This document shows, piece by piece, positions 11,605 through 53,035 of a stretch of 64,000 bases of DNA (its first letter is position 1; each line of letters starts with the position of its first letter). The notes below the pieces were generated by a model. The model was not told where the DNA came from. It did no database searches and worked only from the letters and a program-made list of their open reading frames with translations. Where the stretch lies: positions 414,841 through 478,840 of IMG/VR virus record IMGVR_UViG_3300044957_000763; one strand, given 5' to 3'. The position numbers were made by a program, and so were the translations under genes.

Positions 11605-11622
11605 ATATATCAAAGCGGCTTT

Positions 11623-11638
11623 ATGTGCGATAAGTAAA
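11623..11638 (+). promoter_or_regulatory. 16-bp element ATGTGCGATAAGTAAA, copy 2 (nrdJ leader)
   Basis: Identical copy at 4820-4835; lies just after a terminator. Confidence 0.65.
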
Positions 11639-11695
11639 AAGAACACAACGCAATAGCGAGCTCGCAATGGAGCAAAAAAAGAAGTGATAAAAACA

Positions 11696-37659: not shown

Positions 37660-38907
37660 ATGGCAGACCGCATATTTATCAACAAAGACTCAGGTCAATA
37701 CAGTGAGCGAGAACTCAATCGTATTGACTGGAGCCAGGTTCGAGACGGCATGGTCAAGGCTCGAAAGGCTGCGAATGCTGGCAAAAACCTAAACCCGTTC
37801 GGTATGGTTACCGGACTACTTGACACTAGGCTGGCACAGCTTGAGGGAGGCAAAGTTTTCGAGTCTCCTGTAATGGACATGCCAGAAGAACCAGGCGATG
37901 AATCACGCATTCAAATGATTGCTGATGCAGTTGCAACTGGTCAAGACCTTGACACAGAGGACGCACAATTTGGTCTCGACAATGTTGAGTCTGTTGCAGC
38001 TAAAGCTGGCTTGGAGCCAGAAGAGGTTGCAGCTACGCTTCAAGATTATGTTGGGCTAAACATAGACGAGGTTCCTGCGGAAGAGGGTGGCATAGAGGAT
38101 TCAACTTCGGAAGATGGGTCTGCTATGGAAACCTTCGCCTCTCGCATAGCTAAGAAAAAGCTACCTGCTGCTTTGGAAAAATTCAAATTCAAGCAAAAAG
38201 GCGGCGACAACCCAGAGAAGCACAAGGGTAAAGACAAAGAAGAAAAGGACGATGACGAAGATGGAGCAGAGGCTATGCTTCGCAAGGGCAATGAACACTC
38301 TGATGAAAAAGTAAAGGTCAGCCGCAAAATCGTATTCACCAGTCCTGCTCAATTGAGCGCGGCCGCTGTTGAGGCCGCTCGCGCTGCTGGTGACGAAGAG
38401 TTGGTTCGTGCAACATTGGCTGCACGTGCAGAACGACGAGTTGCCATTGGTCAACTTGCCGCTGAAGCAACTCTTGAGCAAATCACTCGAGAGGCAAAAA
38501 GCAGACGCCGAGCCGCCACTGCGACCAAGGTGGAAAAACCAAAAGAGGTAAAAGCTAACGTGAAAACAGACAAAACAACAACCGGCGAAGACTTTGTCAA
38601 GCCCACAGAACTTAGCACAGGTCAAAAATCGGCATTTGCAAGCAAGGCTCGTGAACTCGGTTTCCCTGAGAGGTACATCACCGCATTGTTAGGCACTCGC
38701 AACGCGAACACTGTCACAGAAGACGACGTTCGCAATATTGCAGAAGGTCCTGGCAAATACCAAGAAAAGGTAGAGCGTGTGGCCGCGATGATTCGCGAAG
38801 CAAAGCTCGATGAAGCTAATCGAAACCGAATCGTCAAGTTCTGGGTTGAAGAACTCGGATACCCGGCTGACTACATCAGCAAGATGGTTGAAGATTACCA
38901 AGCGTAA
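37660..38907 (+). CDS. Hypothetical head structural protein
   Basis: 415 aa, acidic and Ala-rich; GGAGG RBS; several R-x-A motifs (TRLAQ, SRIAK, TREAK, IREAK); followed by a hairpin. Confidence 0.6.
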   Translation: MADRIFINKDSGQYSERELNRIDWSQVRDGMVKARKAANAGKNLNPFGMVTGLLDTRLAQLEGGKVFESPVMDMPEEPGDESRIQMIADAVATGQDLDTEDAQFGLDNVESVAAKAGLEPEEVAATLQDYVGLNIDEVPAEEGGIEDSTSEDGSAMETFASRIAKKKLPAALEKFKFKQKGGDNPEKHKGKDKEEKDDDEDGAEAMLRKGNEHSDEKVKVSRKIVFTSPAQLSAAAVEAARAAGDEELVRATLAARAERRVAIGQLAAEATLEQITREAKSRRRAATATKVEKPKEVKANVKTDKTTTGEDFVKPTELSTGQKSAFASKARELGFPERYITALLGTRNANTVTEDDVRNIAEGPGKYQEKVERVAAMIREAKLDEANRNRIVKFWVEELGYPADYISKMVEDYQA

Positions 38908-38927
38908 CCTTTAACTCCACGATGCTA

Positions 38928-38959
38928 TCTGGGCACAGATTCTGTCAACTGTGCCCAGA
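38928..38959 (+). terminator. 11-bp hairpin after 37660..38907
   Basis: tctgggcacag-attctgtcaa-ctgtgcccaga; no clear U-tract. Confidence 0.45.
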
Positions 38960-38986
38960 ACCAAACCAGACAGGCAGTAAAACAAA

Positions 38987-39202
38987 ATGTTGAAAACAAA
39001 CAGAGTACAAAGGGTTGACGCAGGCGATATGAGCGCATTGGTTGAGGCTGTCAAAAAACAGATGAGCAACCAAGGCGATGCTTTGAGCAAAGACGCCTCT
39101 AAGTTATTAGATGGGCGAAATGGCTGTAATGGCTATAGTGCCGATGGCACATCGCAACCCGCCACAATGACTGGTAACGGCATTGTAATTTCAGAATTGT
39201 AA
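38987..39202 (+). CDS. Small hypothetical protein
   Basis: 71 aa ORF filling the gap between 38907 and 39215. Confidence 0.45.
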   Translation: MLKTNRVQRVDAGDMSALVEAVKKQMSNQGDALSKDASKLLDGRNGCNGYSADGTSQPATMTGNGIVISEL

Positions 39203-39214
39203 GAGGACAGAACA

Positions 39215-40084
39215 ATGAGAAGAGCATTCCAAAAAGTATCGGAGCAAAATCAAGCACCTGATTATGTGTTGAAGCGTTTTGCTGCCACTGAAGACAATCT
39301 TGAAGTAGACCCATATGAGGGCCTGCGACAACGTGCTGCCGAGAACCAACAAAGAATTGCACATGATGAATTGGTGTACGGTCGACCTGAAGCACCAAAG
39401 CCGGCGCGAGAGTGGGAACAGGAAAGAATTGCAGACACTTATCGACCACGACAAATGAGCCGGACTGCAGACAGTTTTGAGCCAGAAGACCTTAGTAGAC
39501 GTTCTGTGAGGCGTGTTGAAACCGCAGAATCACACAATACTGGCTATCGCCCAATGGAAAGCTATAATAGCGGCGGCAACGAACTTTACGTTACACGAAT
39601 GGACGCTGAACGAATGCTATACAATGGCGAGTCGTTCTTTGACCCACAGTTGGCAGAAATCACGTCAACAATTGCAGAACGAGACATGCGAAGGAAAGCA
39701 GAACAGGCAATGCGCGACAAGCAGTCATTGGTTGGAAGCAAATGGGAAAGCCAGGCATCTGGTCGCGCTAAACGCGAGCACAAGCGTGTACTCGACAGGT
39801 GGAGCAATTTCGACGCAGTAAATGGCGGATTTACTCGAGTGGCCAACGAACGAGAGACCGCGAGCCGATTTGGCATGACAGACCCAACTGCAGCATTACA
39901 GCGAGATATGCTTCGGCAAGAGGCTGTTCAAGAGCGAATGCAAAGAAAGGCGGCAATCAAGGGAATTGACCATGAAACACCGGCACAACGAAATTCATGG
40001 GAAGACGAAGTACAACTGATGGCAGGCACAGTGCAACAAGACCACTCAATGTCTTGGATTAGTGACTTCTTCAAAGGTAAGTAA
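39215..40084 (+). CDS. Hypothetical head-associated protein
   Basis: 289 aa, Arg/Glu-rich; GAGG RBS; LKRFAA motif. Confidence 0.6.
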   Translation: MRRAFQKVSEQNQAPDYVLKRFAATEDNLEVDPYEGLRQRAAENQQRIAHDELVYGRPEAPKPAREWEQERIADTYRPRQMSRTADSFEPEDLSRRSVRRVETAESHNTGYRPMESYNSGGNELYVTRMDAERMLYNGESFFDPQLAEITSTIAERDMRRKAEQAMRDKQSLVGSKWESQASGRAKREHKRVLDRWSNFDAVNGGFTRVANERETASRFGMTDPTAALQRDMLRQEAVQERMQRKAAIKGIDHETPAQRNSWEDEVQLMAGTVQQDHSMSWISDFFKGK

Positions 40085-40086
40085 GA

Positions 40087-41025
40087 ATGGACGGGATGCT
40101 TTTGAATTCGCCTGGTGGTTCCGACGGGCTTGTTGATTACGACAAGCTCAAAGCCACTTTGCGCGATGTACAAAATGCGCCCAGCGAGAATGTTGCTGTT
40201 GTAATACAACAGCTTCCACAAAGTACTGGAGATGAATTCCTAGATTCTAAGATTGAGGTAGTCAAATATTTGGCGGGGCCAACCGGAAAAGTTAAGAGTG
40301 ATGGCGATGGCAACATGAGCGATGTTATCAATGAAATACAGATGTACATTGATAATAAGTCTCAAGAGTCAAAATCACAAAATGGAGTAGCTATGGCAGA
40401 TAATGCGTTTAATTGGGTTAGATATTGCCAACAGAAGAAAGAAACTGAAACAAGTCCTTCTGCTAAGAAAAAGAAGAAGACTAAAGCAAATCCGTTTCGA
40501 GTTTTAATGGGTATGGTTGGAAAATTGCTTGACCATGGTGTACCCAAGCCCACTGTTGTCCGACACGTAACAAAGAATACTAGCTTTGATGAACCAACAG
40601 TTGACCGGGCTGTGGACATTGTGCGTGAATATAACCGAAAACAACAGCGACGTGACGATGTTGAGCCAGAAATTGATATGGAACAAGGCGAAAAGCCAGA
40701 AAAGCGCGACGTTGATGCAACTTTTAACTATGTTAAGTACGTCAAAGCACAGAAAGCATCGTCTGCAGGTGAAAGCAGAGAACTATACAACGCAGAACCT
40801 CAATGGGAGAAGCGTTCTACTGCTGAGTTGTTCTCGCGTCTTGGATGGTTAAATTCGCTTATGGGCTATGACAGCGGCATGCCAATGGGAGACGGCAAAA
40901 AAGCAGCAGATAAGCAGGGCGCTAATGGGCAGATAGACAAAATTACATCAGAACTGCAACGTCGTGGGTTTAATCAAGAAGAGATTGACTCCCTGTTGCA
41001 GGTTAGGGGCGCAACCAAGGGATAG
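40087..41025 (+). CDS. Hypothetical head-associated protein
   Basis: 312 aa; internally repeated FNWVRYCQ / FNYVKYVKAQ segments. Confidence 0.6.
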   Translation: MDGMLLNSPGGSDGLVDYDKLKATLRDVQNAPSENVAVVIQQLPQSTGDEFLDSKIEVVKYLAGPTGKVKSDGDGNMSDVINEIQMYIDNKSQESKSQNGVAMADNAFNWVRYCQQKKETETSPSAKKKKKTKANPFRVLMGMVGKLLDHGVPKPTVVRHVTKNTSFDEPTVDRAVDIVREYNRKQQRRDDVEPEIDMEQGEKPEKRDVDATFNYVKYVKAQKASSAGESRELYNAEPQWEKRSTAELFSRLGWLNSLMGYDSGMPMGDGKKAADKQGANGQIDKITSELQRRGFNQEEIDSLLQVRGATKG

Positions 41026-41027
41026 TC

Positions 41028-42179
41028 ATGAGCAAAGAGCATAAGAAGACTGATAAAGAAAAGGCGCCAAAGAAAACAAACATTGAAGATTTTGTTTGCG
41101 AGATGCTGGAAAGGCTTCACGGCACACTGAAGCAAATGAAAAAATCGGTTGAGCACGAACCGATAGATTTGCCCGATGCGATTGGTCCGGCTACCGATGG
41201 TGTACTCAAGGATATTGCCGATAGCGGGCCTGTGACCAGGGTGCGTAAGCTCATTATCATTCCTGGTGGCGACAAGAGCAAAGTAGAAGAACTCATGGGT
41301 AAATTGATGTCAGCGCGAGAGGCTGATATCAATAACGGATTGCGCACCGTATTTGCTCAGGTGCACAAGGCAAAAACAAGCGGAGAAGTTGCGTATCAAA
41401 TGCACGCCGTTCGCAATCTGGATACCTTGATTAGAGAAGCAAACGGCGATACAAGAGAAGCATTAACCAAAGTGCGAAGCCTGGTGTTGTCGGGAGACCA
41501 AGCACAACTTGACGCTGCTAATTTTAGATTGCGCAATGTATTCGCGTCTATAGTTAGCACAGAACCCAATACTCGACTTGCATACACATCATTGTCGACT
41601 CAATTTGGAGAAGGCTATCAACTATGTCCAAAATCTGTACACCAAATTGGGAAAGCTATTCCTATGGAGATATCTAAGTGTCGCGACAACTGTATAGATT
41701 GTCGTGTTACACGTGATGGTGCAGTAACTTGTGCATATGCAGATTGGCTTAGAAAGTCTGCTGACAATCACGAATTAGTCGAAGCTCGTTTGGAACGAGT
41801 AAAGCACAACCTAAATGGAACAACACTCAATAAAATTGGTGCTCCAGACCCAATTAAGAACTGGGAAGGGCAATTAGAAGAAATTCATGACAGGTACCCA
41901 GAGGTTAAAGAAACATCAATGGAAACTGCACTTGGTGACACAGACAAGGGCCTGTTCGGTCACCAAGGAGAGACCATCAAGCGAATACAAGAACTGCTAG
42001 AATCCAAGAAAGATTCAGGCAAGACTCGAGAAGAATCACTTGAAAATGACCGCACCAATGCAGATTATGATGATGAGACGCTTGAACAGATGCTTGATGA
42101 CGAACGAGAGCCGTTCAACGAGCAAGAGCTCGACATGATGATTGAAGAGCTGCTATCAGACTCAAGAAACAAGGAGTAA
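41028..42179 (+). CDS. Hypothetical head-associated protein with a Cys-rich domain
   Basis: Cys cluster CP..C..C..C...C; C-terminal repeats of ExxLE helices. Confidence 0.6.
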   Translation: MSKEHKKTDKEKAPKKTNIEDFVCEMLERLHGTLKQMKKSVEHEPIDLPDAIGPATDGVLKDIADSGPVTRVRKLIIIPGGDKSKVEELMGKLMSAREADINNGLRTVFAQVHKAKTSGEVAYQMHAVRNLDTLIREANGDTREALTKVRSLVLSGDQAQLDAANFRLRNVFASIVSTEPNTRLAYTSLSTQFGEGYQLCPKSVHQIGKAIPMEISKCRDNCIDCRVTRDGAVTCAYADWLRKSADNHELVEARLERVKHNLNGTTLNKIGAPDPIKNWEGQLEEIHDRYPEVKETSMETALGDTDKGLFGHQGETIKRIQELLESKKDSGKTREESLENDRTNADYDDETLEQMLDDEREPFNEQELDMMIEELLSDSRNKE

Positions 42180-42185
42180 GTAGCA

Positions 42186-42518
42186 GTGTGGTACAAATTC
42201 GCCAACCAATACGGTGAACCAACGCCATTTATTCCAGAACCAACTCGTGAATTGGGTTCTAATGAGCAAGAGGCCTTGGCTGACGACACACCTGCATTAG
42301 ATAAGCGAATCAAAGAGTTAGCAAATCCAAAGAAAGACCCATACCAGCAAACAATTGAAGGTCAGCTTACTTCTTTGCATCACGAGAATAAAAACATGCT
42401 AGACCCTAACGGAGAGGAGCCAGATGCCTTGTGGCGTGGTTGGGGGATTAAGGCGCAAAGTGATGCAACATCGCCAGATAAGAACTGGCCAGCGGCTTTG
42501 AGCAAGGTACAAGTTTAA
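42186..42518 (+). CDS. Small hypothetical head-associated protein
   Basis: AAGGAG RBS, GTG start; N-terminal WYKFAN; TIEGQLTSLH. Confidence 0.55.
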   Translation: MWYKFANQYGEPTPFIPEPTRELGSNEQEALADDTPALDKRIKELANPKKDPYQQTIEGQLTSLHHENKNMLDPNGEEPDALWRGWGIKAQSDATSPDKNWPAALSKVQV

Positions 42519-42539: not shown

Positions 42540-44939
42540 ATGAGGAAAGACGGACAAAATGCACCGCGCCTACAGAGTGTTATTACTGAAGCTGTAGAAA
42601 GAGTCAGCAACATACAACCGAGAAACACCGTTGGTGCTCGAGAACACCCTACTATTCGCAGTGCTCGCTCATCATCAGATGTAAAGAGAGACATTCGTGC
42701 GAGATATGCATTTGTTAGTGGTAGCCAAAACACCATTACAACAGCGCCTAATTTTTACACTCCGTTCACGACACCAAGTTCTTTTCAGATTCCCACAAAC
42801 AGAATTGAAGAGTATTTGTGGGCGCAATGGTTTTTTGATAATGAACCTGCCGTTGCGGCATCTATTGAGTTTTACACAGACTTTCCGCTTTCTGGTTTCG
42901 AACTAGAATGTGGGAACTCTAAGGTTCTTGAGTTTTATCAGCAAATGGTCAAAGATTTGGATTTTGCCAGATTGCTTCCGTTGATTAGTCAAGAATACCA
43001 TCTTCGCGGCGATGTATTTGTTTATGCCTCTCTTGATTGCGAGCATTGCGGAGGAACAGGCGTCGACCAAGACACTCATGAGCCTTGCGAACACCTAGGT
43101 GCTAAATGGAAAAGCATCACGCTGCTAAACCCCACACAGGTAGAACTTAGTCCATCAATGATGGACATGCAACCAATTTACTATTACATGCCAGACGAAG
43201 GCATGAAAAAGGTTGTTCAAGAAAGAAAGCCAATTGCAACATACAAGTCAATTCCAGATGCAATTAAGGCTTATATCATGAAAAATGAGCCAATTCCGCT
43301 AGACCCAGTGTGTATCCACCACTTTAAGAGAGGTGCGGCGCCTTGGCAACCATTCGGCCGAAGTATGGTACGAAGGCTTTTTCCCACGCTTGTATACAAG
43401 GATAAGTTACGACAAGCACAGTATTTGGTTGCAGAAAGGCATATTTTACCATTCAAGATTGCCAAGTTAGGCAATGACGACCGACCAGCCAGCGAACAAG
43501 ACCTTCAAATGATTGCGGAAGAAATCGCTAATGTCGCAAACGACCCTTTGATGACAATGATTGCACCGCATACATTTGAAATTGATTATGTTGGCGCAAG
43601 TGGAAAAGTACTACAACTCACAAACGAATTCGAACTTATCAACCAAGATATTTTCGATGGATTCATGCTTAACAAAGCATTGCTCAACGGAGAAGGTCCT
43701 TCCTATGCCAATGCACAAGTTGGTCTGCTTAGTATGGGCCAGCGCCTCAATAAATTGCGCGGAGAAATCGCGCACTGGATTGAAGAAAATCTATTCAAAC
43801 CAGTTGCTGAATGGAATGGATTTGAGGTTGATAATAAGCGTGGTGGAACTAAGTTGGTTTACCCAACAGTGAAATGGGATGATTTGCAATTGCGTGATAA
43901 CACCAATCTGCTGCAAATTGCCATGCAAGCGCGACAAGCCGGAGACCTTTCCTCACAGACAATGCTCGGACTCATGGATATCAACTACGACCAAGAAATT
44001 GAAAGACTACGTATGGAAAACAGCTATGCCGTATCTACGTCTCCAATGTTGCCTGCTGGCGAAATGGGCAATGGATATCGTGGACCAATGGGTGGCGGAA
44101 TGCCGCCGATGGGTGGCGGAATGCCACCAATGGGTGGCGGAATGCCACCAATGGGTGGTGGAATGCCGCCAATGGACGGAGGAATGGGCATGCCGCCAGC
44201 ACCTGGCGGCATGCCACCGATGCCAATGGCTTCAAATAATACCCCAGAAGAAAACTATCGAGAAGCCGTGTCGTTTACCAACGCAGTACATGACAGTGTG
44301 CGCACAAGTTTCTACAATCACACACGTCAGGTTTATGCCAGCAAGTACAAATCTGAAGCACATCGGAACTTTGTTGAATCACAGTGTCCAATTGATGGAA
44401 CTGGATTCCGGGGTGTATTGGCCTCAGAAATGAGTCCATTGATTGACCCGCTAGATGATTATGGACAATATCATGGCGGAGATGAGTCTGTTCCTATGAA
44501 CCCGCTTGCAATGCAAGAACGGCAAAGTGATGTGTCAAACGGTTGGGTTCGCGAAGCAAGAAAGCCATCAAAAGATGAGGACATCAGACCAAGTCCATAT
44601 CAGAAGTTTACAAGTTGGGAAAACAAACTGTACGGAATTGTTCTGAGCATTAACCCTCCATTGCCATTCTATGCACAATACGCGGCAGGGCCTGATGACC
44701 AGTACAGGCTCGATGGTGCGTTCCCTGATATTCAACTGGGTGTTGAGGCAGATAGTGAAACCTATCATTCAACTCCAGAATATATTGAAAGAGACCGTTA
44801 CCGGGATTCACAACTAGCGGCCCAAGGATGGACTTTGTTGCGATTTACAGAAAATGAACTTAAAGAAAGACCGGACGAGGTCCAGACGTTGATTATGCGT
44901 ACAATCCAACATCTAATCAAACGCAAACTCGGGAACTAA
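42540..44939 (+). CDS. Portal protein with a Pro/Met/Gly linker and C-terminal DUF559-like nuclease-fold domain
   Basis: WFFDNEPAVAASIEFYTDFP, PFGRSMVRRLF, AERHILP.KIAKLG, WIEENLFKPVAE, VKWDDLQL portal-type pattern directly before the protease; C-terminal YRLDGAF...VEADSETYH...RDSQLAAQGWTLLRFTE. Confidence 0.75.
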   Translation: MRKDGQNAPRLQSVITEAVERVSNIQPRNTVGAREHPTIRSARSSSDVKRDIRARYAFVSGSQNTITTAPNFYTPFTTPSSFQIPTNRIEEYLWAQWFFDNEPAVAASIEFYTDFPLSGFELECGNSKVLEFYQQMVKDLDFARLLPLISQEYHLRGDVFVYASLDCEHCGGTGVDQDTHEPCEHLGAKWKSITLLNPTQVELSPSMMDMQPIYYYMPDEGMKKVVQERKPIATYKSIPDAIKAYIMKNEPIPLDPVCIHHFKRGAAPWQPFGRSMVRRLFPTLVYKDKLRQAQYLVAERHILPFKIAKLGNDDRPASEQDLQMIAEEIANVANDPLMTMIAPHTFEIDYVGASGKVLQLTNEFELINQDIFDGFMLNKALLNGEGPSYANAQVGLLSMGQRLNKLRGEIAHWIEENLFKPVAEWNGFEVDNKRGGTKLVYPTVKWDDLQLRDNTNLLQIAMQARQAGDLSSQTMLGLMDINYDQEIERLRMENSYAVSTSPMLPAGEMGNGYRGPMGGGMPPMGGGMPPMGGGMPPMGGGMPPMDGGMGMPPAPGGMPPMPMASNNTPEENYREAVSFTNAVHDSVRTSFYNHTRQVYASKYKSEAHRNFVESQCPIDGTGFRGVLASEMSPLIDPLDDYGQYHGGDESVPMNPLAMQERQSDVSNGWVREARKPSKDEDIRPSPYQKFTSWENKLYGIVLSINPPLPFYAQYAAGPDDQYRLDGAFPDIQLGVEADSETYHSTPEYIERDRYRDSQLAAQGWTLLRFTENELKERPDEVQTLIMRTIQHLIKRKLGN
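44085..44186 (+). repeat. 21-bp coding tandem repeat (PMGGGMP)n in the portal gene
   Basis: About 4.5 near-identical units of ccaatgggtggcggaatgccN. Confidence 0.9.
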
Positions 44940-44972: not shown

Positions 44973-45069
44973 TTCCAGACGATTTTTTGAAAACAAGTAG
45001 GTCTAAGGGCAAACATTGCCGAACGCACATATAGACGTTAACTTTTCAAAAAGTTGTTTTGGAGCGAGC

Positions 45070-48000
45070 ATGTTACGAAAGGGTATATCAGGAAACCTAA
45101 TTGGGCGCAATCAAATAGAGTTCATTGACCCGGCCGAAGCTCGGCGGGTCATCATTGCTGCCAAAAATGGCAAACAAAGCCTATATGCAGACCCAGCAGA
45201 TGTGCTCAATCGAGACGTTGAAGGCGATTTTGATTTATTGAAAGAAATGAATGACCGCCAGGGATACAATCTCTTGTGGGTCAGATGTCGTGCTATTGAC
45301 GCTGATACGATTAATGCCAATGGTGATTATTTCTCAGCAGAAGAGCTTCTTAAAGAAGTCATTCACCATGGAAAAAAGGTTCCGGCTTATAAAACCTTTG
45401 AAGGTTGTCCAATCCACACTAATCACGATAACAAAGACATCACCAAGGCTAAAGGCGAGGTCGTATATGCAGAGTGGGATGATAAAAACCAGTGCGTGTG
45501 GTGCACGTTCTATATATCAGAAGACGCATACCCAGAAATTGCCAATGGTATTCGCATTGGTATGATGAGCGATGTCTCAATGGGATGTACTGTTGAGAGC
45601 GGCTTGTGTTCTGTTTGTGGAAAAGAGGCCGTTCGTGTTGATGACTACTGCGAACACCTTAAAAAATACAAAGGCAAGAAATTGCCTGGTGCGAACAGTA
45701 AGGTGTATGAAAAAAACAAGGGTATCAAGTTCATTGAACTGTCTCTGGTTAATGATGGTGCATTTGACAGTTGTGCAATTAGCGAACTCTATGACCAAGA
45801 CGAACTAACTCAAAAAGCACTTGAATTCAACCGAAGAGTTGCTGAGATTCGAAATCATGTTTTGACAGCGGGTCACCTTACTGCTGAAATGACGCCTTCT
45901 GTGCGCAATGCATATGAGGGCATGCTAAGAACTGTTGTGAGCACAACCACAACTGCTGTTAGAGTGGCGCAGACCCAAGTAGACAATCCACAGTTACTTG
46001 CAACTAATGGTGCAAATGCCAATTCTACCGTTGCTGGAATTTTGAAGGCACTTGGAATGGACGCAAGACAACAACTTAACGTGCTTGACTTGCTAAATGT
46101 TGCGCTTAACTTCCTTGAAGTCGCAATTATGCAGATGTTCACTCGCAAAGATAATGTTGATTTACAACACGTATCAAAGATTGCCAAAGCTATGTCTGAC
46201 CTTCAAGGAACCATGCAAGACTTAATTGACGATGGTGTTGATTCACCAGTAGGTGCCATTGCCGGTACTGGTGGTGCTGCAGGAACATTGCTAAATCCAG
46301 GCGGCGGACAAACAGGACAAACCTCTGTAGCACAGGCACCAGGCCAAGCACAAGCACCCGTACAACCATATAATCCGGCAGAAGGCGGAGTCGGACAAAT
46401 GATGTCACCTGTTCAAGTAAGTGAAAGGTCATTTACTACTGAAAAACCACTCAACCCATTATTAGGCGAAAGCAATAGACGCCAATTGGTATGGGCAAAC
46501 AAAGATAGTTCAGAGGAGCGAGAAGTATACGCATCGCGCAAATCTAGAGCCAATAACATAGAACGATTTGGTCAAAGCCTATTAGCTTTGGCTGAAAGCG
46601 TTGGGGCTGGCCCACTGGCGGCACCAATGTCTACACGTGCCGCTAATAACGAGCAACCAGTGAGAAGTACTAAAACAGTGCAAAATAACGGAGACACAAC
46701 CAAGATGAAAAACCCATTCCAGAGAATCGCAAGTAAATTGCGTGAAAGGAAGCCACTCGAGGTCTCATTCTCAGCAGAGGCTCACAGTCCTGATACAAAC
46801 CACAGAATTGTAGTTTCAACGAAAGGAGACATCGAAGGCTACTATATGAACCGGCTTGCCAATTGGCAACCGCAACTCAACGACCACCTTATTAGTGCAA
46901 TCGAGCAAGAGAACCTTGATTATGCGCTTCCTGTTTTAATGGAAGACTTTCAAAATCATGTTCGAAACGCACAGACTAAAAACATTGACATTTGGTCAGA
47001 TATTGACCTTGAACCAGAGGGTGAAAAGGATGTCAAGGAAAATGCACTTGAGGGTGAACGACACCCGGTAAAGGGCGATGGTGAAATCATTGACAGCTAT
47101 GTCAAGACAAAGCGAACAAACCCTGCTGGTGACACAACCATAGAGGACGAACTTGAAGCCAAAAGAACAGGCACGGATTCTAAGGCTAAAGAAGAGTTGC
47201 TCGAAAATGCTGGTCTGTATGCACGTCGAGATAATGGTCAGGAAGTACATGACTTCCTGGTTGACGATGCACGTTGTGGATGCCCTGACGAACATATTGA
47301 AGAGAGGCTCAAGGGTCGACACGGTCGCAATGACAAGGTGGAAACACGCAAACTTGCAAGCAATATCGCCACCGAACTCGGCCGCGCTGCTTATGCTGCT
47401 CGTGTGACACCAGAAGAGATTATCGAAGTCTCTACAAAAATTGCACAACGAGAAGACCTTGAGGAACTTATCGCTCTGGCATCTCTGGGTACAGATACCA
47501 GAGAGCGAACTGCACAAAGACACGCTTTCTTTAACAACTCATCTGTAATGTTGGGTGCTGAAAATGCTATCTATCACGGTCTTGGCAAAATCGTCAGCGA
47601 TGACATTAAAGCCGGTGACGTTGTAGACGGTCTTCGTGCTGTAATTAGCGAGCGAGAACTTGCTGGAAAATTGATTACTCGAATTGCAAAAACAATGGTT
47701 GAGAATGCACCAACAACTTATGCTGATGTTGTGGTTAAAGCATCTCGCGAAGAACAACTGCGAACTGCTTTGAATTCTCTTGCAGATGGCGAGACTGAAA
47801 CCAGTCGGGGTCATCTCAAGGCTGTGCTTTGCGCTCTAGCAGGAGCTGCAGATGAGTGCCAAGCCGCGCCTGAAGAGGTTATCAATGTAATTGCATCACG
47901 CAATTCTGGTGAAATCTTCGAAACACTCGGCATGTACAACAGCGCAAGTGCACGAGAGGCCAGAAATACTCTTAGACAAAGAGAAGAGTTCTATGGCAAG

Positions 48001-49302
48001 CGAATGGCATCTAAGAAAGATGTCGAGCACACCGTGTTCGGCTGGATGTCAGATTTTGTCCACGATGGTCAAATCGACAGCTACGCGCTTGCCGAAGCGG
48101 CAAGCCTTCTCGGAGCTCGACCTGTTGCTGCGACTAATTTACTTGGTCGACTGCTCGAACGCCAGGCGGCAATTTCGGTTACAGATGAAAAGTGCACAAC
48201 CAAGAGACTGACAGCAACTGTTAGTGACTTTGAAGACCTAGACCCCAAGTCAAATGACTTCGACCAACAGTTTAGAATGCGTGCAATGGACATCTTCCGA
48301 CAAGCTGGTTACGATGTTGACGATGGCACATTCAACCTAACTAGTTTGAGTGTTGACCAGTCTGGAAACATTCAAGCTGAAGTCTCCGCACGACTCACCA
48401 AGACATTCTGTGTCGAAGGAAGTAAAGTTGGCGCGGGCATGGATGCGGTAAACGAACTTCCAGTTGAAGCCACACTTGCAGAAAACACACCAATGGAAGA
48501 TGAATCTGGAAATCTCTACACTGTTTCGGCCATGGATGTGCTTGGAATGGAGCGAACTGCTCAAGCCGCACCAGGAATGGGTGGCGGAATGGGAATGGGA
48601 ATGCCGCCGGCTGCACCAGCGGGTGGTGGTGTTGACCCGTTGGCCGGGGCTACCGACCCAATGGGCGGAGGCTTTGCTTCAATGACAGTACCTAGTGAAT
48701 CAGGGGCGCCAGGAACTGAACCAGTTACCGACACTGTAAACGCAGACGATATGTCAGAACCGGGCACAAAACAACCATGGGGGACAGTGTGTCCTGTCTG
48801 TGGTTCAAAGGACGTTAGCATTGCTAACGGCGAAGGTGAGTGCCAGAGCTGTGGTACACAATTGAAATTCAAGCTGATGGTCGAGGCCGCTCCGAGCACC
48901 GATGATGCTGGCGGCGGAGACGAGGGTGCCGATGCTGGAGTGGATGACATGGGTGCAATGCCTGGTGGTGACATGGGCGCTGCACCAGCCATGCCTGCGG
49001 CTGGGGCACCAACAGACCCAATGATGATGCAAGCAAGTTGGACAAGTTCGCCGCTGGTATGGCAACGATTTGCTGCGGCTGGTCAAGGCGTTTCTGAAAA
49101 AGAAGCAACCAAAGCCAGACAAGCAATGAAACAATTACCAGTCGGACATGTTTGCCCTGGCTGTGGCGACCGTGAACAAATCGAGAAGATTCGAAATAAG
49201 ACTATTTGTACTGCTTGCGGTACGGTGGCTGTTTCCAAGGTTGCGGCAGTAGAAGGACAGCCTAATCTGTTGTCCAATACCATCTACTGGATACTCGAAT
49301 AA
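45070..49302 (+). CDS. Prohead (capsid maturation) protease with a ~1150-aa C-terminal extension
   Basis: N-terminal NANGDYF..EEL, HTNHD (His), VSMGC (Ser), FIELSLV HK97/assemblin-type pattern; C-terminal CPVCG..CQSCG and CPGCG..CTACG zinc ribbons; ATG 45070 with GGAG at 45061. Confidence 0.75.
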   Translation: MLRKGISGNLIGRNQIEFIDPAEARRVIIAAKNGKQSLYADPADVLNRDVEGDFDLLKEMNDRQGYNLLWVRCRAIDADTINANGDYFSAEELLKEVIHHGKKVPAYKTFEGCPIHTNHDNKDITKAKGEVVYAEWDDKNQCVWCTFYISEDAYPEIANGIRIGMMSDVSMGCTVESGLCSVCGKEAVRVDDYCEHLKKYKGKKLPGANSKVYEKNKGIKFIELSLVNDGAFDSCAISELYDQDELTQKALEFNRRVAEIRNHVLTAGHLTAEMTPSVRNAYEGMLRTVVSTTTTAVRVAQTQVDNPQLLATNGANANSTVAGILKALGMDARQQLNVLDLLNVALNFLEVAIMQMFTRKDNVDLQHVSKIAKAMSDLQGTMQDLIDDGVDSPVGAIAGTGGAAGTLLNPGGGQTGQTSVAQAPGQAQAPVQPYNPAEGGVGQMMSPVQVSERSFTTEKPLNPLLGESNRRQLVWANKDSSEEREVYASRKSRANNIERFGQSLLALAESVGAGPLAAPMSTRAANNEQPVRSTKTVQNNGDTTKMKNPFQRIASKLRERKPLEVSFSAEAHSPDTNHRIVVSTKGDIEGYYMNRLANWQPQLNDHLISAIEQENLDYALPVLMEDFQNHVRNAQTKNIDIWSDIDLEPEGEKDVKENALEGERHPVKGDGEIIDSYVKTKRTNPAGDTTIEDELEAKRTGTDSKAKEELLENAGLYARRDNGQEVHDFLVDDARCGCPDEHIEERLKGRHGRNDKVETRKLASNIATELGRAAYAARVTPEEIIEVSTKIAQREDLEELIALASLGTDTRERTAQRHAFFNNSSVMLGAENAIYHGLGKIVSDDIKAGDVVDGLRAVISERELAGKLITRIAKTMVENAPTTYADVVVKASREEQLRTALNSLADGETETSRGHLKAVLCALAGAADECQAAPEEVINVIASRNSGEIFETLGMYNSASAREARNTLRQREEFYGKRMASKKDVEHTVFGWMSDFVHDGQIDSYALAEAASLLGARPVAATNLLGRLLERQAAISVTDEKCTTKRLTATVSDFEDLDPKSNDFDQQFRMRAMDIFRQAGYDVDDGTFNLTSLSVDQSGNIQAEVSARLTKTFCVEGSKVGAGMDAVNELPVEATLAENTPMEDESGNLYTVSAMDVLGMERTAQAAPGMGGGMGMGMPPAAPAGGGVDPLAGATDPMGGGFASMTVPSESGAPGTEPVTDTVNADDMSEPGTKQPWGTVCPVCGSKDVSIANGEGECQSCGTQLKFKLMVEAAPSTDDAGGGDEGADAGVDDMGAMPGGDMGAAPAMPAAGAPTDPMMMQASWTSSPLVWQRFAAAGQGVSEKEATKARQAMKQLPVGHVCPGCGDREQIEKIRNKTICTACGTVAVSKVAAVEGQPNLLSNTIYWILE

Positions 49303-49473: not shown

Positions 49474-51384
49474 ATGGCTACAACAAAACAAGAAGGAGGA
49501 CTGGACGCACGCACCAAAGCGGTTCGCTTGGCAATGCTACAGGAATCCGACGCGGACGATTTTCGACAATGCGTTCGTGAAGTGCAAGCCAGCACAGGAC
49601 TTTCCGCAGCGGAAGCTCGGATTGTTGCTGGAGCACTTAGAAGTGAAATGCTTCCCAAAGTTGCTGAATCTCTCGGACTAGAGGAGGATGACATTGCAGA
49701 TTTTGCAAACAAACTTCCAGACGAAGAAGATGATGTAGACGGGGAGCAACCGACCACAGATTTCGCTGACGACAAGGTTGAAGACGAAGATGACTTCGTT
49801 GAAGAACCACAAGATGATACAGCCGCCATTCGAGGGGATGCTCTCGATATGGGTGGTGAAGACGCCATCGAAGACGACATGAGCGATGAAGACGACTTGG
49901 GTACAGAACAGACCCTTGAGATTCAGGTGCCTACGGGCAAGGTAGACGAGATTCAAGAAGCGATTCGTTCGATTCTTGGAGACGATGCTTTTGGCCTTGG
50001 CGGAGATTCTGAATTCAATTTCGAAGATGACGAAGAGGGAGATTTTGGAGATGAAAATTTCGAAGATAAACCTTGGGGAGACGACGACGATTTGAATTTA
50101 GAAGATGAAAACATTGGGGAAGAAGCCCCGAACATAGGAAAACAGGTGATTAGCATGTCCAACAAGCAAAAGGCTGGCCGTGAAGTCAGGGCTGCTGATG
50201 AGCAGGTGAAACCAAAAGACCGAGGTCTTGGAAGTGACACTAGCCACGGAGGCAAACCTTTCCAATATGCGGCAGATGCCCAATATCAGGGTGAAGACAC
50301 ACGACCTGGCATGACTCTTGAGGACAGTGCCGGCAATTCACTCCGCGACCAAAACCCGACTTTCGCAGATGCGACAGTCCCCGCCAAAAACCCCGAGAGA
50401 CTTCAGTTGAAGAATTCGTACAAAACCTTCACATACGAAGGTGCCGATGGTGACATCGAGTACGACATGAGCAGCGAAGTTTTCGAAGTCCCCTCTGCTG
50501 GCGAAAAAGCCGGCGGCGAATTTGAAGTTCCGACTCAAATGACCAGTACTCTTGACCGCAAGACTACTGTGGCCACTTTGAACAGTAACGTCGAAAGAGT
50601 AGCTGGGGAAAAAGCAACCGACGACAGTGATTATGTCACTGCAAACAACGAAGAGCTTTATGTTACTTCTGACAATCGCACCGTAGGTCGCGATGAATTC
50701 GAAGAGCATGTCATTGACACCTTGGTGGCAAGTGGCATGACTGAGAAAGAAGTACTTGCAATGTCATTCGCAGAAGGGCTCGAGCTATACGGCAATATTG
50801 TCGAACAGCGCACTGCTGCAAGCAATGCAATGGGAGAAATTACCCGCGCACATGCCGAAAGGCAGGCTCGTATCAACAAACTGGCAGCCGACCTTACGGT
50901 CGAGATTACTGGTGGAACTGAAGAGCCAGATGGTACAGAAGAGACACTTGAGGAAGCCCTTAAGGAATCTCGAGAGGCCATGAGAGACACATTCATCCGC
51001 GAGGCTGAATTGTTCAAAAAGCGCGTTAAAGCCGCTTATGGCGTAACTACTCGACTCGTAATCGCTGGAATTATCAACGATAACGAGGTCGACAATCACG
51101 TAGACACTTGGCTCAAGGACAACCTGAGCGTGGGTGCCATGCTTAAGCAAGGCAACTTCATGCTGAGGGCTGCGTCCAAGACGACCGACCGAACCGTACA
51201 AAGTGGCAACAGTGGCAACACTCGAACTGCTGGAGTATCGGTAAACCCTGCCCTTGTAACACCGAATCTCGGTAGCACACAGGAGGTTAAGGACCGTCTC
51301 GCCAATCTTTTCACTGTTGGTGGTATCCCACGTAATGCATTTGATGCTTACAAAGATAACGACAACAACAGCAGGGACTTTTAA
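49474..51384 (+). CDS. Putative capsid scaffold protein
   Basis: 636 aa, very acidic, coiled-coil C-terminal third; between the protease and the decoration/capsid genes. Confidence 0.6.
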   Translation: MATTKQEGGLDARTKAVRLAMLQESDADDFRQCVREVQASTGLSAAEARIVAGALRSEMLPKVAESLGLEEDDIADFANKLPDEEDDVDGEQPTTDFADDKVEDEDDFVEEPQDDTAAIRGDALDMGGEDAIEDDMSDEDDLGTEQTLEIQVPTGKVDEIQEAIRSILGDDAFGLGGDSEFNFEDDEEGDFGDENFEDKPWGDDDDLNLEDENIGEEAPNIGKQVISMSNKQKAGREVRAADEQVKPKDRGLGSDTSHGGKPFQYAADAQYQGEDTRPGMTLEDSAGNSLRDQNPTFADATVPAKNPERLQLKNSYKTFTYEGADGDIEYDMSSEVFEVPSAGEKAGGEFEVPTQMTSTLDRKTTVATLNSNVERVAGEKATDDSDYVTANNEELYVTSDNRTVGRDEFEEHVIDTLVASGMTEKEVLAMSFAEGLELYGNIVEQRTAASNAMGEITRAHAERQARINKLAADLTVEITGGTEEPDGTEETLEEALKESREAMRDTFIREAELFKKRVKAAYGVTTRLVIAGIINDNEVDNHVDTWLKDNLSVGAMLKQGNFMLRAASKTTDRTVQSGNSGNTRTAGVSVNPALVTPNLGSTQEVKDRLANLFTVGGIPRNAFDAYKDNDNNSRDF

Positions 51385-52174: not shown

Positions 52175-53035
52175 ATGAGCAACATCCGAAACGTATATGG
52201 CATTGACGAGCAAAACGAAGAGTTTCTCGCAGCCGCTATGGACACCCCCGAAGGTCGCGTCGCACTTGCGCAGGCAATGGTTGAGCCCATCAAAACATCT
52301 TTGATGTACCAGGGCGTTGGCCGAAAACTGCTGATGGTTGACGAACTACCGCAGGGTGCCCTTCCTCGCTACGAGCGAGACATCGCAGTTAAGTCTTACG
52401 TAATGAGTAAGCGTGGCTCAGTTCCAACGTCTATCGTTGAAGCTGAAGAGTTGATGGTGCCGGTTCTTGAAATCGCTTGTAACCCAACCGTTAAACTCAA
52501 CGAAATCCGTGCACGACGATTCTACATTGTAGACCGAGCACAGGTTCGTGCGAAGGACTCATTGCAACGACAAGAGGATGCAGAAGTCTTCCGTGTTATT
52601 AACGCGGCTGTACCTGCGGCACACAACATCACGGTTACTGGTTCACTCCAGCCCGAGAACATCAACCTCGCTCTGTCTCTCATTGAGGAACACGAGTTGA
52701 TTGGTGCGAAGATTGTTGTGCACCCTCAGCGCTACAAGGACATCCGAACATGGGGTAAGGAATTCTATGATGAAGCGACAACTCGCGACATCTTGATGAC
52801 CGGTCTCTTCGGCCACCTGTACTCTGCAGACATCCACGTCAGCACAATCGTTCCAAAGAACGCTGTCTACGTACTGGCACCTGCCGCCTTCGTTGGCGCG
52901 ATGCCTGTTCGCCAGGACATCACCGTTCTTCCGAGCGACGACCCTCGACGACTCCGCCTCGGCTGGGTCATCTTCGAGGAACTTGGCTTCGCCGTTATCA
53001 ACGACTACGCCACCGCTCGAATCATCGTTAGCTAA
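52175..53035 (+). CDS. Major capsid protein (HK97 fold, 286 aa)
   Basis: GRVALAQAMVEPI...GVGRKLLMVDELPQG...EIACNP.V...QEDAEVF...IVVHP..YKDI...GLFGHLYSADI; strong RBS; follows protease-scaffold-decoration genes; strong terminator after it. Confidence 0.85.
   Translation: MSNIRNVYGIDEQNEEFLAAAMDTPEGRVALAQAMVEPIKTSLMYQGVGRKLLMVDELPQGALPRYERDIAVKSYVMSKRGSVPTSIVEAEELMVPVLEIACNPTVKLNEIRARRFYIVDRAQVRAKDSLQRQEDAEVFRVINAAVPAAHNITVTGSLQPENINLALSLIEEHELIGAKIVVHPQRYKDIRTWGKEFYDEATTRDILMTGLFGHLYSADIHVSTIVPKNAVYVLAPAAFVGAMPVRQDITVLPSDDPRRLRLGWVIFEELGFAVINDYATARIIVS

What the first reader, a model, noticed from the sequence alone, without database searches (positions are those of the whole stretch)
45070..49302. 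1410-aa prohead protease organised like a polyprotein
Seen: a protease domain of ~260 aa is followed by at least five R-x-A motifs that separate a helical block, a G/Q/P linker, four ExxLE helices, repeated helical units, an M/G/P-rich tract and two terminal zinc ribbons. Established: HK97-type proteases are usually about 200-300 aa, or are fused only to scaffold or capsid. Inference: it self-cleaves into several internal head proteins.
Basis: partly seen in the sequence, partly recalled or inferred. Interest (0 to 1): 0.6.

Follow-up and report, generated by a model that had tools for sequence, protein, structure and literature searches.

The report
Giant prohead protease with nested scaffold gene
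In a 479-kb lake-water phage, the capsid-maturation protease is fused to a 93-kDa multi-domain protein that is probably also made alone from a conserved internal start site, a much enlarged version of the protease/scaffold gene pair known from lambda, Mu and herpesviruses.

Summary
Window 45070-49302 (+) is one open 1410-aa gene lying between the portal and major capsid genes of a complete 478,840-bp phage related to Bacillus phage G.

- **Protease.** Residues ~35-245 form an assemblin/T4-gp21-fold protease. His119 and Ser170 are invariant and align with the catalytic His/Ser of T4 gp21 and HK97 gp4.
- **The rest.** The other ~1150 aa match no known fold. They comprise a conserved helical block, a disordered G/Q/P tether, an alpha/beta domain, acidic helices, an internally duplicated helical domain, a second alpha/beta domain, an M/G/P tract and two zinc ribbons.
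Met546 (ATG 46705) is nearly invariant inside the variable tether. A Shine-Dalgarno motif precedes it in 27 of 27 non-redundant relatives, against 7% at other internal Met codons. This predicts a nested, co-terminal 865-aa acidic product, as in lambda C/Nu3 or herpesvirus UL26/UL26.5.
- **Cleavage motif.** [KR]-x-A is the a-x-b pattern most often conserved in linkers here. It is 3.7-fold enriched (z about 14) in the unalignable post-protease linkers of distant relatives, and it also occurs in the capsid and scaffold-like neighbours. It is a plausible cleavage site with Ala at P1, as in assemblins.

Cleavage, the fate of the products and scaffold function remain untested. I class this as a new variant of a known kind.

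The parts
45061..45064 (+). Shine-Dalgarno (GGAG) of the full-length gene, 5 nt before ATG 45070
   Evidence: 81% of non-redundant relatives have an SD at this start
45070..49302 (+). Full-length gene: 1410 aa, 152 kDa, protease fused to a core/scaffold-like protein
45172..45804 (+). Prohead protease domain (aa 35-245), assemblin/T4 gp21 fold
   Evidence: PHROG 18299 at 3e-20; 38% identity to phage G gp19; VIA Z 10.4 to 5jbl; Foldseek probability 0.99
45424..45426 (+). His119 codon, predicted catalytic His
   Evidence: Invariant; aligns with T4 gp21 His85 and HK97 gp4 His65
45577..45579 (+). Ser170 codon, predicted catalytic Ser. Relatives carry an intein at Cys173, three residues downstream
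   Evidence: Invariant; aligns with T4 gp21 Ser140 and HK97 gp4 Ser114; intein junctions
45607..45657 (+). Cys180-x2-Cys183 ... Cys194-x-(Cys/His)196 zinc knuckle inside the protease domain
   Evidence: C180, C183 and C194 invariant; same motif in phage G gp19 and Cali gp93
45835..45843 (+). Candidate release site R256-V-A258 just after the protease domain (family consensus L-E-K-K-A-S)
   Evidence: the same K-[VT]-A-[SG] motif recurs in this linker in distant relatives and in phage G gp19
45961..45972 (+). Candidate cleavage site R298-V-A-Q301, at a helix end before a low-confidence loop
   Evidence: [KR]-[LVI]-A-Q kept in 93% of relatives; pLDDT below 50 at 300-319
46024..46239 (+). Highly conserved helical block (aa 319-390), present only in the full-length product
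   Evidence: also present in 73 of 87 large distant relatives
46255..46704 (+). Disordered G/Q/P-rich tether (aa 396-545), containing candidate site R523-A-A525
   Evidence: pLDDT below 50; composition; site
46690..46693 (+). Internal Shine-Dalgarno (GGAG), 11 nt before ATG 46705
   Evidence: SD present in 27 of 27 non-redundant relatives while the encoded residues vary; the spacing equals that of the MCP, p636 and u415 starts
46705..49302 (+). Predicted nested in-frame gene: 865 aa (Met546-Glu1410), 92.9 kDa, pI 4.75, net charge -49
46771..46977 (+). Small alpha/beta domain (aa 568-636) ending in candidate site R632-N-A-Q635
   Evidence: AF2 pLDDT 74-85; site kept in 81% of relatives and followed by an indel-rich stretch
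47002..47232 (+). Acidic helical stretch (aa 645-721) holding the three ExxLE motifs
   Evidence: pLDDT 42-51
47236..48168 (+). All-helical domain (aa 723-1033) built from an internal duplication (761-873 and 914-1029)
   Evidence: AF2 pLDDT 78-92; hhalign 96%, E 2e-9; no credible structural match
48175..48411 (+). Second alpha/beta domain (aa 1036-1114)
   Evidence: AF2 pLDDT 77-85
48553..48564 (+). Candidate cleavage site R1162-T-A-Q1165, in a disordered region directly before the M/G/P tract
   Evidence: [RK]-x-A-Q kept in 98% of relatives
48565..48783 (+). M/G/P-rich disordered tract (aa 1166-1238)
48784..48882 (+). Zinc ribbon 1 (aa 1239-1271; C1241, C1244, C1258, C1261)
   Evidence: Invariant Cys; Pfam Zn_ribbon_RRN7 at 0.008; AF2
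49018..49299 (+). Basic C-terminal domain (aa 1317-1410, pI 8.9) with zinc ribbon 2 (C1362, C1365, C1380, C1383)
   Evidence: The module is shared by 258 cluster representatives, most of them giant protease fusions
42540..44939 (+). Portal protein (799 aa), upstream neighbour
   Evidence: PHROG 16240 at 2e-37; Pfam Portal_Mu; 29% identity to the phage G portal
49474..51384 (+). 636-aa very acidic protein (net -80), scaffold-like, with conserved [RK]-[LI]-A-E (18-21) and R-T-A-[SG] (584-587)
52175..53035 (+). Major capsid protein (286 aa), with conserved G-R-[VT]-A at residues 27-30
   Evidence: PHROG 2522 at 8e-69; 49% identity to phage G gp27, which also has the motif; the motif is 94% conserved

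Best explanation
The gene encodes two co-terminal proteins.

1. The 152-kDa full-length protein carries the phage's only recognisable prohead protease (Ser170/His119, assemblin fold, with a zinc knuckle). A conserved helical block follows, then a ~150-aa disordered tether.
2. An internal ribosome-binding site and ATG at codon 546 produce the C-terminal 865 aa alone. This is an acidic 93-kDa multi-domain protein: an alpha/beta domain, acidic helices, a duplicated helical domain, a second alpha/beta domain, an M/G/P spacer and two zinc ribbons.

By analogy with lambda C/Nu3, Mu I/Z and herpesvirus UL26/UL26.5, the short product would be a scaffold or core protein of the very large (phage-G-like) procapsid. 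The long product would co-assemble through the shared part and so bring a few protease molecules inside.

After assembly the protease would cut after Ala in [KR]-[VTIL]-A / [S,G,Q,N] sites placed in the linkers (about residues 258, 300, 525, 634 and 1164). It would also cut the 636-aa acidic neighbour and the N-arm of the capsid protein. This would free the protease and dismantle the core.

Shown here: the fold, the catalytic residues, the domain map, conservation of the internal SD+ATG, and conservation and enrichment of the motif. Inferred: use of the internal start, cleavage at the motif, the scaffold role and the fate of the fragments.
For: - Protease identity. Catalytic His/Ser alignment.
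- This is the only prohead-protease hit in a complete genome with direct terminal repeats.
- In relatives, inteins sit at Cys173 and Cys194, inside the conserved active-site region.
- Gene order portal - this gene - acidic protein - 248-aa protein - MCP is conserved in 44-76 related loci.
- Internal start: Met546 is conserved in 27 of 27 relatives and an SD precedes it in 27 of 27. The figures are 81% at the annotated start, 7% at other internal Met codons and 6.6% at any codon. The residues encoded across the SD vary (GD, GG, RG, GS, EG, RS, EV, EE). The spacing equals that of neighbouring true starts. Distant relatives L078 and L079 have an equivalent SD+ATG at codons 532 and 552.
- Motif: [KR]-x-A is the top conserved a-x-b pattern in linkers, with 6 sites against 3 or fewer for any other pattern. 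In the linkers of 34 distant relatives there are 74 occurrences against 20 expected, with P2 V>T>A>I and P1' S>G>N. It is also conserved in p636 and the MCP and present in phage G gp19 and gp27.
- Assemblins cut after Ala at their R and M sites, and UL26.5 is nested in UL26 (PMC4498786; PMC11565193).
- The nested product is acidic.
Against: - There is no expression, proteomic or biochemical data for this uncultured phage, and no RNA runs hold it.
- The C-terminal 1015 aa match no known scaffold or any other fold.
- A separate, very acidic 636-aa protein could be the real scaffold.
- Several conserved [KR]-x-A sites lie inside well-folded helices (898, 917, 978, 1031), so part of the enrichment may be structural.
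- Family members are related, so the 27-of-27 count overstates independence.
- The complex prediction of MCP with the C-terminal domain gave no verdict.
Confidence: 0.6

Rival explanations
1. This is a pure self-cleaving polyprotein. Only the 1410-aa chain is made. It cuts itself at R-x-A sites into five or six pieces, which stay in the head as internal head proteins. The internal SD+ATG is not used for initiation.
For: Modular layout with disordered linkers. The motif is conserved at the borders. The fused state is strictly conserved, with no split genes in 76 loci.
Against: SD+ATG conservation of 27 of 27 at codon 546, with variable encoded residues and native spacing, is hard to explain without initiation. 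The acidic charge of the pieces does not suit DNA-associated internal proteins.
Confidence: 0.15
2. The C-terminal part is cargo rather than scaffold. It is packaged and ejected into the host as a pilot or effector protein, like the ejection proteins of phiKZ/SPN3US or the 'polyvalent proteins'. The protease domain would only serve to load and trim it.
For: Zinc ribbons and a basic C-terminal domain could bind nucleic acid. The middle and C-terminal extensions vary widely across the superfamily of 1100-2700 aa, which suggests arms-race variability. Cali gp93 carries an unrelated inserted domain, PF25735.
Against: No enzymatic or effector domain was found by Pfam, PHROGs, sequence search against solved structures or fold searches. 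The overall charge is strongly acidic. Within the clade, length and layout are very stable at ~1390-1450 aa, unlike polymorphic effectors.
Confidence: 0.12
3. There is no processing. The protein stays intact as a giant structural core or size-determining protein, the protease domain acts only on other substrates, and the [KR]-x-A pattern reflects helix composition.
For: Some conserved sites lie in folded helices. The protein is rich in Ala and Arg.
Against: The motif is most conserved where everything around it is variable or disordered. It is enriched with z about 14 in linkers that cannot be aligned between distant relatives. Assemblin-fold proteases characteristically release themselves.
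Confidence: 0.08

Closest known systems
Herpesvirus UL26 / UL26.5 (assemblin-scaffold fusion with a nested scaffold gene)
   Same: N-terminal assemblin-fold Ser/His protease, a linker and a C-terminal assembly protein. A shorter co-terminal product comes from an internal in-frame start. The protease releases itself by cutting after Ala (R site YLQA/T, M site VQA/S; PMC4498786; also OsHV-1, PMC11565193). The model matches assemblins at Z 7-9.
   Different: Here the nested product is 865 aa with two zinc ribbons and a duplicated helical domain, against ~330 aa there. The internal start is a bacterial SD+ATG rather than a separate transcript. The candidate sites have Lys/Arg at P3. There is no sequence similarity outside the fold. 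The protease carries a zinc knuckle.
Lambda C/Nu3 and Mu I/Z protease-scaffold nested genes (from my own knowledge of the literature, not checked here); T4 gene 21 internal start (annotation)
   Same: A scaffold or shorter product is translated from an in-frame internal start of the protease gene, between the portal and capsid genes.
   Different: Those proteins are 360-440 aa in total, and lambda C belongs to a different protease class (ClpP/SppA-like). This gene is three to four times longer and has a long disordered tether.
Bacillus phage G gp19 (head maturation protease, 300 aa)
   Same: Closest characterised-phage relative of the protease domain: 38% identity, the same zinc knuckle, and K-[VIT]-A motifs flanking the domain. 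The capsid protein is 49% identical and the portal 29%.
   Different: gp19 stands alone. None of the 1150-aa extension has a detectable counterpart in phage G.
Giant 'capsid maturation protease' proteins of cluster C mycobacteriophages (Cali gp93, 1286 aa; Myrna gp97) and of Gordonia and Rhodococcus phages (Stormageddon gp13, Pupper gp94, E3 gp77)
   Same: The same protease domain at the N-terminus (32-37% identity), the same position between portal and capsid genes, low-complexity linkers, CxxC modules and [KR]-x-A enrichment. All five examined share a conserved internal Met preceded by an AGGA-type SD.
   Different: The C-terminal parts are unrelated in sequence. Their putative nested product is only ~390-450 aa. 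They are mostly annotated 'hypothetical' or, wrongly, 'tape measure'.
T4 gp21 / phiKZ gp175 / SPN3US gp245 prohead proteases with processed core and ejection proteins
   Same: Best structural match (5jbl, Z 10.4). These are jumbo-phage proteases that cut many head proteins (PMC10052503, PMC5694885; listed, not read).
   Different: By my recollection those enzymes cut after Glu (x-x-E); no conserved [LIASG]-x-E appears in the linkers here. Their substrates are separate genes, not fusions.
Polyvalent proteins of phages and plasmids (Iyer et al. 2017, PMC5512222)
   Same: Very long multi-domain virion-associated proteins with an embedded peptidase proposed to release the domains.
   Different: Those carry recognisable effector enzymes and metallopeptidases. 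Here no effector domain was found and the peptidase is the head maturation protease.

Membership tests
Assemblin-fold prohead proteases (T4 gp21 / HK97 gp4 / herpes assemblin) | Assemblin-type beta-barrel fold | tested here: met
   AF2 model with pLDDT 85-95 over aa 40-240. VIA Z 10.4, rmsd 2.4 A, 129 of 165 residues to T4 gp21; Z 7-9 to six herpes proteases. Foldseek probability 0.96-1.0.
Assemblin-fold prohead proteases (T4 gp21 / HK97 gp4 / herpes assemblin) | Catalytic His and Ser at the homologous positions | tested here: met
   His119 and Ser170 are invariant in 47 sequences. They align with T4 His85/Ser140 and HK97 His65/Ser114. The alignment probabilities are low (32% and 1%), and the residue numbers of the references come from my memory.
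Assemblin-fold prohead proteases (T4 gp21 / HK97 gp4 / herpes assemblin) | Match to the curated sequence models (Pfam Peptidase_S78 or Peptidase_S77) | tested here: not met
   No Pfam protease hit at E up to 1, and none in the whole genome. Only PHROG 18299 and 2774 match. This is a divergent subfamily.
Assemblin-fold prohead proteases (T4 gp21 / HK97 gp4 / herpes assemblin) | Gene lies in the head module between portal and major capsid genes | tested here: met
Assemblin-fold prohead proteases (T4 gp21 / HK97 gp4 / herpes assemblin) | Proteolytic activity on head proteins | not testable with these tools
   Needs expression of wild type against Ser170Ala.
Nested protease/scaffold gene pairs (lambda C/Nu3, Mu I/Z, UL26/UL26.5) | Conserved in-frame internal translation start giving a co-terminal product | tested here: met
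   ATG546 with an SD in 27 of 27 relatives against a 7% background, variable encoded residues, native spacing. Actual use in vivo was not tested.
Nested protease/scaffold gene pairs (lambda C/Nu3, Mu I/Z, UL26/UL26.5) | The co-terminal product is a scaffold: helical, acidic, binds the capsid protein and is absent from virions | tested here: inconclusive
   It is helical and acidic. No similarity to known scaffolds was found. Complex prediction with the MCP gave no verdict. A second scaffold-like gene follows.
Nested protease/scaffold gene pairs (lambda C/Nu3, Mu I/Z, UL26/UL26.5) | Self-release site between the protease and the rest | tested here: inconclusive
   Conserved [KR]-x-A sites at 256-258 and 298-300, and in the same linker of distant relatives. 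Cleavage has not been shown.
Polyvalent proteins / effector polyproteins | Several recognisable effector or enzymatic domains in one chain | tested here: not met
   None found by Pfam, PHROGs, sequence search against solved structures or the fold searches.
T4/phiKZ-type processing (cleavage after Glu) | Conserved [LIASG]-x-E motifs at the processing borders | tested here: not met
   No such pattern is among the conserved a-x-b motifs in linkers.

The most novel reading that the evidence does not exclude
The nested protease/scaffold design, with self-release after Ala, may be a general and scalable solution for building very large (T about 52) capsids. Huge phages would have expanded the nested product into a 90-200-kDa multi-domain zinc-ribbon core protein. 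Both the P1-Ala specificity and the two-product gene logic would then be shared from these phages, through cluster C actinophages, to herpesviruses, implying inheritance from the common ancestor of Duplodnaviria rather than convergence.
Probability: 0.25. Interest if true: 0.75.

Novelty: new variant of a known kind. Interest (0 to 1): 0.55.

Why it matters
How phages with half-megabase genomes build and size their enormous capsids is largely unknown, and phage G is the only cultured example. This gene family has at least 258 clusters at 50% identity. Most members are 1100-2700-aa protease fusions from uncultured huge phages. It appears to be the central assembly and maturation factor of one large clade.

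The work gives three concrete, testable predictions:
- two products from one gene;
- catalytic residues Ser170 and His119;
- a [KR]-x-A cleavage code that also marks the capsid protein and the neighbouring acidic protein.

If the code is right, it allows mature virion proteins to be predicted across these metagenomic phages. A similar internal start seems to exist in cluster C mycobacteriophages, which are cultured and genetically tractable, so the idea can be tested at the bench. It would also correct many 'hypothetical' and 'tape measure' annotations.

Tried and rejected
- **Phage records.** tblastn of aa 261-1410 against 50,697 phage records found no match. Megablast of the gene also found none.
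- **Solved structures by sequence.** Profile searches with aa 1-400 and aa 396-1410 gave only noise and weak zinc-ribbon hits.
- **Fold searches of the aa 396-1410 model.** Foldseek against PDB and BFVD, VIA-align wide (best Z 5.2) and the ESM Atlas by shape (TM below 0.25) gave no credible match. The Atlas feature search of aa 720-1116 gave nothing usable.
- **Phage G neighbours.** hhalign of the extension or helical block against phage G gp15, gp20 and gp21 found nothing. p277 against the phage G decoration protein gp26 showed no similarity.
- **Complex prediction.** MCP with the C-terminal domain (aa 1316-1410) gave no verdict, score 0.00. This is not evidence either way.
- **Glu-type cleavage motif.** It is not conserved.
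- **Gene fission at the predicted borders.** None was seen in 76 loci.
- **Cali gp93.** My guess that it holds an M15-type peptidase was not confirmed by Pfam; only PF25735 was found.
- **Relatives without the protease domain.** A subset of zinc-ribbon-module proteins lacks it and has no PHROG match.
- **RNA evidence.** Only lake-water DNA runs hold the gene; contigs cannot show starts.
- **Literature.** Four of the six paper searches looked for a prior description of these giant protease fusions or their nested start and found none.

Full report
**1. What is there**

Window 45070-49302 (+) is a single open frame of 1410 codons. A GGAG lies 5 nt before its ATG. The window is the last 64 kb of a 478,840-bp virus record with direct terminal repeats, rated complete. 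Only lake-water metagenomes hold it.

The neighbours are head genes:
- a portal at 42540-44939 (PHROG 16240, 2e-37; 29% identical to the phage G portal);
- a 636-aa very acidic protein at 49474-51384;
- a 248-aa protein;
- a 286-aa major capsid protein at 52175-53035 (PHROG 2522, 8e-69; 49% identical to Bacillus phage G gp27).

This order is kept in 44-76 related IMG/VR loci.

**2. The N-terminal domain is a prohead protease**

- Residues 42-239 match PHROG 18299 'head maturation protease' (3e-20) and PHROG 2774 (4e-26). No Pfam protease model matches.
- The closest cultured relative is phage G gp19, a stand-alone 300-aa protein (38% identity).
- An AF2 model of aa 1-400 has pLDDT 85-95 across the domain. 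It superposes on T4 gp21 (Z 10.4, rmsd 2.4 A, 129 residues) and on herpesvirus assemblins (Z 7-9).
- His119 and Ser170 are invariant in 47 sequences. In profile alignments they fall on His85/Ser140 of T4 gp21 and His65/Ser114 of HK97 gp4. The alignment probabilities are low, and the reference residue numbers are from memory.
- Cys180, Cys183 and Cys194, plus Cys/His196, form a zinc knuckle. Phage G gp19 and mycobacteriophage Cali gp93 share it.
- About a dozen relatives carry inteins exactly at Cys173 or Cys194, a typical mark of an essential active-site region.
- No other prohead protease is detectable in the genome.

**3. The family**

The word search found about 65 full-length relatives of 1373-1451 aa, or ~1770-1870 aa when an intein is present, down to 28% identity. 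All are metagenomic, on contigs up to 441 kb. IMG/VR holds 321 encoding stretches. The fused state and the length are strictly kept, with no split genes.

The exhaustive profile search with aa 396-1410 found 258 cluster representatives. Beyond the family itself, they share mainly the M/G/P-linker and double zinc-ribbon module. Of the large ones (1100-2700 aa), 71 of 87 have the same N-terminal protease and 73 of 87 the helical block. 'Protease + helical block + variable middle + zinc-ribbon module' is therefore a widespread design in uncultured large phages.

**4. Domain map (AF2 of aa 396-1410; model numbering plus 395)**

| Residues | Feature |
|---|---|
| 243-305 | Long helices |
| 319-390 | Very highly conserved helical block |
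| 396-567 | Disorder: G/Q/P-rich 396-450, with one weak helix at 496-510 |
| 568-636 | Alpha/beta domain |
| 645-721 | Low-confidence acidic helices holding three ExxLE motifs |
| 723-1033 | All-helical domain, pLDDT 78-92 |
| 1036-1114 | Alpha/beta domain |
| 1115-1238 | Disorder, including the M/G/P tract |
| 1239-1271 | Zinc ribbon 1 |
| 1272-1316 | Disorder |
| 1317-1410 | Basic domain containing zinc ribbon 2 |

The helical domain is an internal duplication: 761-873 is homologous to 914-1029 (hhalign 96%, E 2e-9). None of the folded parts has a credible match in PDB, BFVD or the ESM Atlas. The caveat is that the model was searched whole, not domain by domain.

**5. A conserved internal start**

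Met546 is 98% conserved although it sits in the disordered, otherwise variable tether. At the DNA level, every one of 27 non-redundant relatives has GGAG, GAGG or AGGA 5-18 nt upstream of this ATG. The comparison figures are 81% at the annotated start, 0-19% at the 21 other conserved Met columns, 7% at all internal Met codons and 6.6% at any codon.

The residues encoded across the motif differ (G-D, G-G, R-G, G-S, E-G, R-S, E-V, E-E) while the nucleotides persist. That points to selection on the RNA rather than on the protein.

In the window the GGAG (46690-46693) lies 11 nt from ATG 46705. This is the same spacing class as the MCP (9), p636 (11) and u415 (12) starts. Two distant relatives that cannot be aligned in this region have an equivalent GGAGA+ATG at codons 532 and 552.

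I conclude that a nested, co-terminal 865-aa product is very probably made. It would be 92.9 kDa, pI 4.75, net charge -49.

**6. The R-x-A motif**

The protein has 19 R-x-A against 8.2 expected. In an unbiased scan of all a-x-b residue-class patterns, [KR]-x-A has the most conserved sites in linker and low-confidence regions, six against three or fewer for any other pattern.

The best sites sit at module borders, amid variable sequence:

| Position | Sequence in this protein | Conservation or family form |
|---|---|---|
| 256-258 | R-V-A | Family consensus K-K-A-S |
| 298-301 | R-V-A-Q | 93% |
| 523-525 | R-A-A | 63% |
| 632-634 | R-N-A | Family K-T-A; 81%, followed by indels |
| 1162-1165 | R-T-A-Q | 98%, directly before the M/G/P tract |

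In 34 distant cluster representatives, the short linker between the protease and the helical block cannot be aligned. It nevertheless holds 74 [KR]-x-A against 20 expected (maximum of 2000 shuffles: 35). K-x-A is the most enriched pair (z 14.4). P2 is V>T>A>I and P1' is S>G>N.

Elsewhere in the head module:
- The MCP has G-R-[VT]-A at residues 27-30, 94% conserved and also present in phage G gp27.
- The acidic p636 family has [RK]-[LI]-A-E at 18-21 and R-T-A-S in its disordered tail.
- Phage G gp19 has K-V-A-S and K-I-A-S after its catalytic domain.

Herpesvirus assemblins, which have the same fold, cut after Ala at their release and maturation sites (PMC4498786). I therefore regard [KR]-[VTIL]-A followed by S, G, Q or N as the likely recognition site. 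Some conserved copies lie in folded helices (898, 917, 978, 1031) and may be structural, and no cleavage has been observed.

**7. Mechanism proposed**

The short acidic product, possibly together with p636, forms the assembly core of a phage-G-like very large procapsid. The long product co-assembles through the shared 865 aa and tethers the protease inside through a ~150-aa flexible linker. Once activated, the protease cuts the linker sites, the core proteins and the MCP N-arm. The acidic fragments then leave or are displaced by DNA.

This is the logic of UL26/UL26.5, lambda C/Nu3 and Mu I/Z (the phage cases are from my own knowledge; T4 gene 21 also has an annotated internal start). Here it is scaled up three- to four-fold and decorated with zinc ribbons.

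Two roles remain open. The helical block 319-390 is present only in the long form and is the best-conserved segment after the protease. The basic C-terminal zinc-ribbon domain is the other. A test of the latter against the MCP gave no verdict.

**8. Comparison and novelty**

Giant proteins with this protease at the N-terminus already exist in cultured phages: cluster C mycobacteriophages, Gordonia Stormageddon and Pupper, and Rhodococcus E3, at 895-1286 aa. They are annotated as hypothetical, 'tape measure' or 'capsid maturation protease'. Their extensions are unrelated in sequence to this one.

In all five I examined, a conserved internal Met is preceded by an AGGA-type motif 7-9 nt upstream. 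It lies at Cali codon 889, Myrna 799, Stormageddon 675, Pupper 694 and E3 449. The sample is small and GC-rich, so this is only a lead.

Four of my six literature searches looked for a prior description of the nested start or of the cleavage code for any of these proteins and found none. The finding is thus a new, much enlarged variant of a known arrangement, not a new kind of system.

**9. Verdict**

- Observation: confirmed.
The protease, the modules and the motif hold. 'Polyprotein yielding internal head proteins' is less likely than 'protease gene with a nested core/scaffold gene plus autoprocessing'.
- Confidence in the combined explanation is 0.6. By component: active protease about 0.9, nested product about 0.8, cleavage at [KR]-x-A about 0.5, scaffold role about 0.5.

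Noticed in passing
window 42540-44939 (portal, aa 506-560 and 721-789): The portal protein carries a (GGMPPM)n-like M/G/P-rich tract resembling the tract in the giant protein. It also has a C-terminal DUF559/MTES_1575 endonuclease-like domain (Pfam 1e-6 to 2e-9). Portal length (~790 aa) and M/G/P-rich windows recur in related loci. The shared low-complexity tracts might mediate portal-core contact.
   Followed up: partly
relatives P0012, P0017, P0022, P0025, P0027, P0053, P0058, P0061, P0063, P0064, P0066, P0072, P0077; corresponds to window 45586-45588 (Cys173) and 45649-45651 (Cys194): Inteins (LAGLIDADG_3 / Intein_splicing) are inserted in the protease domain at two sites: next to the catalytic Ser170 motif (Cys173) and in the zinc knuckle (Cys194).
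   Followed up: partly
L002:6992-10852 (Cali gp93), L083:4974-8609 (Myrna gp97), L003:6953-10222, L084:4911-8159, L085:4932-7619: The giant protease proteins of cluster C mycobacteriophages and of Gordonia and Rhodococcus phages share a conserved internal Met (Cali 889, Myrna 799, Stormageddon 675, Pupper 694, E3 449). An AGGA/GGAG motif lies 7-9 nt upstream, suggesting a nested ~390-450-aa product in cultured, testable phages. In GenBank, Cali gp93 and Myrna gp97 carry a 'tape measure' note.
   Followed up: partly
window 49474-51384: This 636-aa protein has net charge -80 (pI 4.2), a D/E-rich disordered N-terminal half and a helical C-terminal part. It is weakly similar to phage G gp21 (E 0.007) and has conserved [RK]-x-A sites at both ends. 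It is probably a scaffold or core protein and a substrate of the protease.
   Followed up: partly
window 52175-53035 (MCP residues 27-30): G-R-[VT]-A in the capsid protein N-arm is 94% conserved in relatives and identical in phage G gp27. It is a candidate N-terminal maturation cleavage site for phage G-type capsids.
   Followed up: partly
proteins P0135, P0139, P0143, P0147, P0154, P0159, P0160, P0162, P0166, P0177, P0191, P0193, P0198: This subset of 1284-1796-aa metagenomic proteins shares the double zinc-ribbon module at about residues 480-750. They lack the protease and helical-block domains by my HMMs, and the four scanned (P0135, P0143, P0159, P0166) have no PHROG match. Their N-terminal parts are unidentified.
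   Followed up: partly
window 37660-42518: Four conserved genes of unknown function (415, 289, 312 and 383 aa) lie directly upstream of the portal and are syntenic in 52-63 related loci. None has a Pfam or PHROG match.
   Followed up: no
L056 (IMGVR_UViG_3300013280_000231), locus coordinates 9938-14231: In this one relative the gene is read as two overlapping frames (1357 aa plus 239 aa) near the C-terminus. It could be a frameshift or an assembly error, and it is the only departure from the fused state.
   Followed up: no
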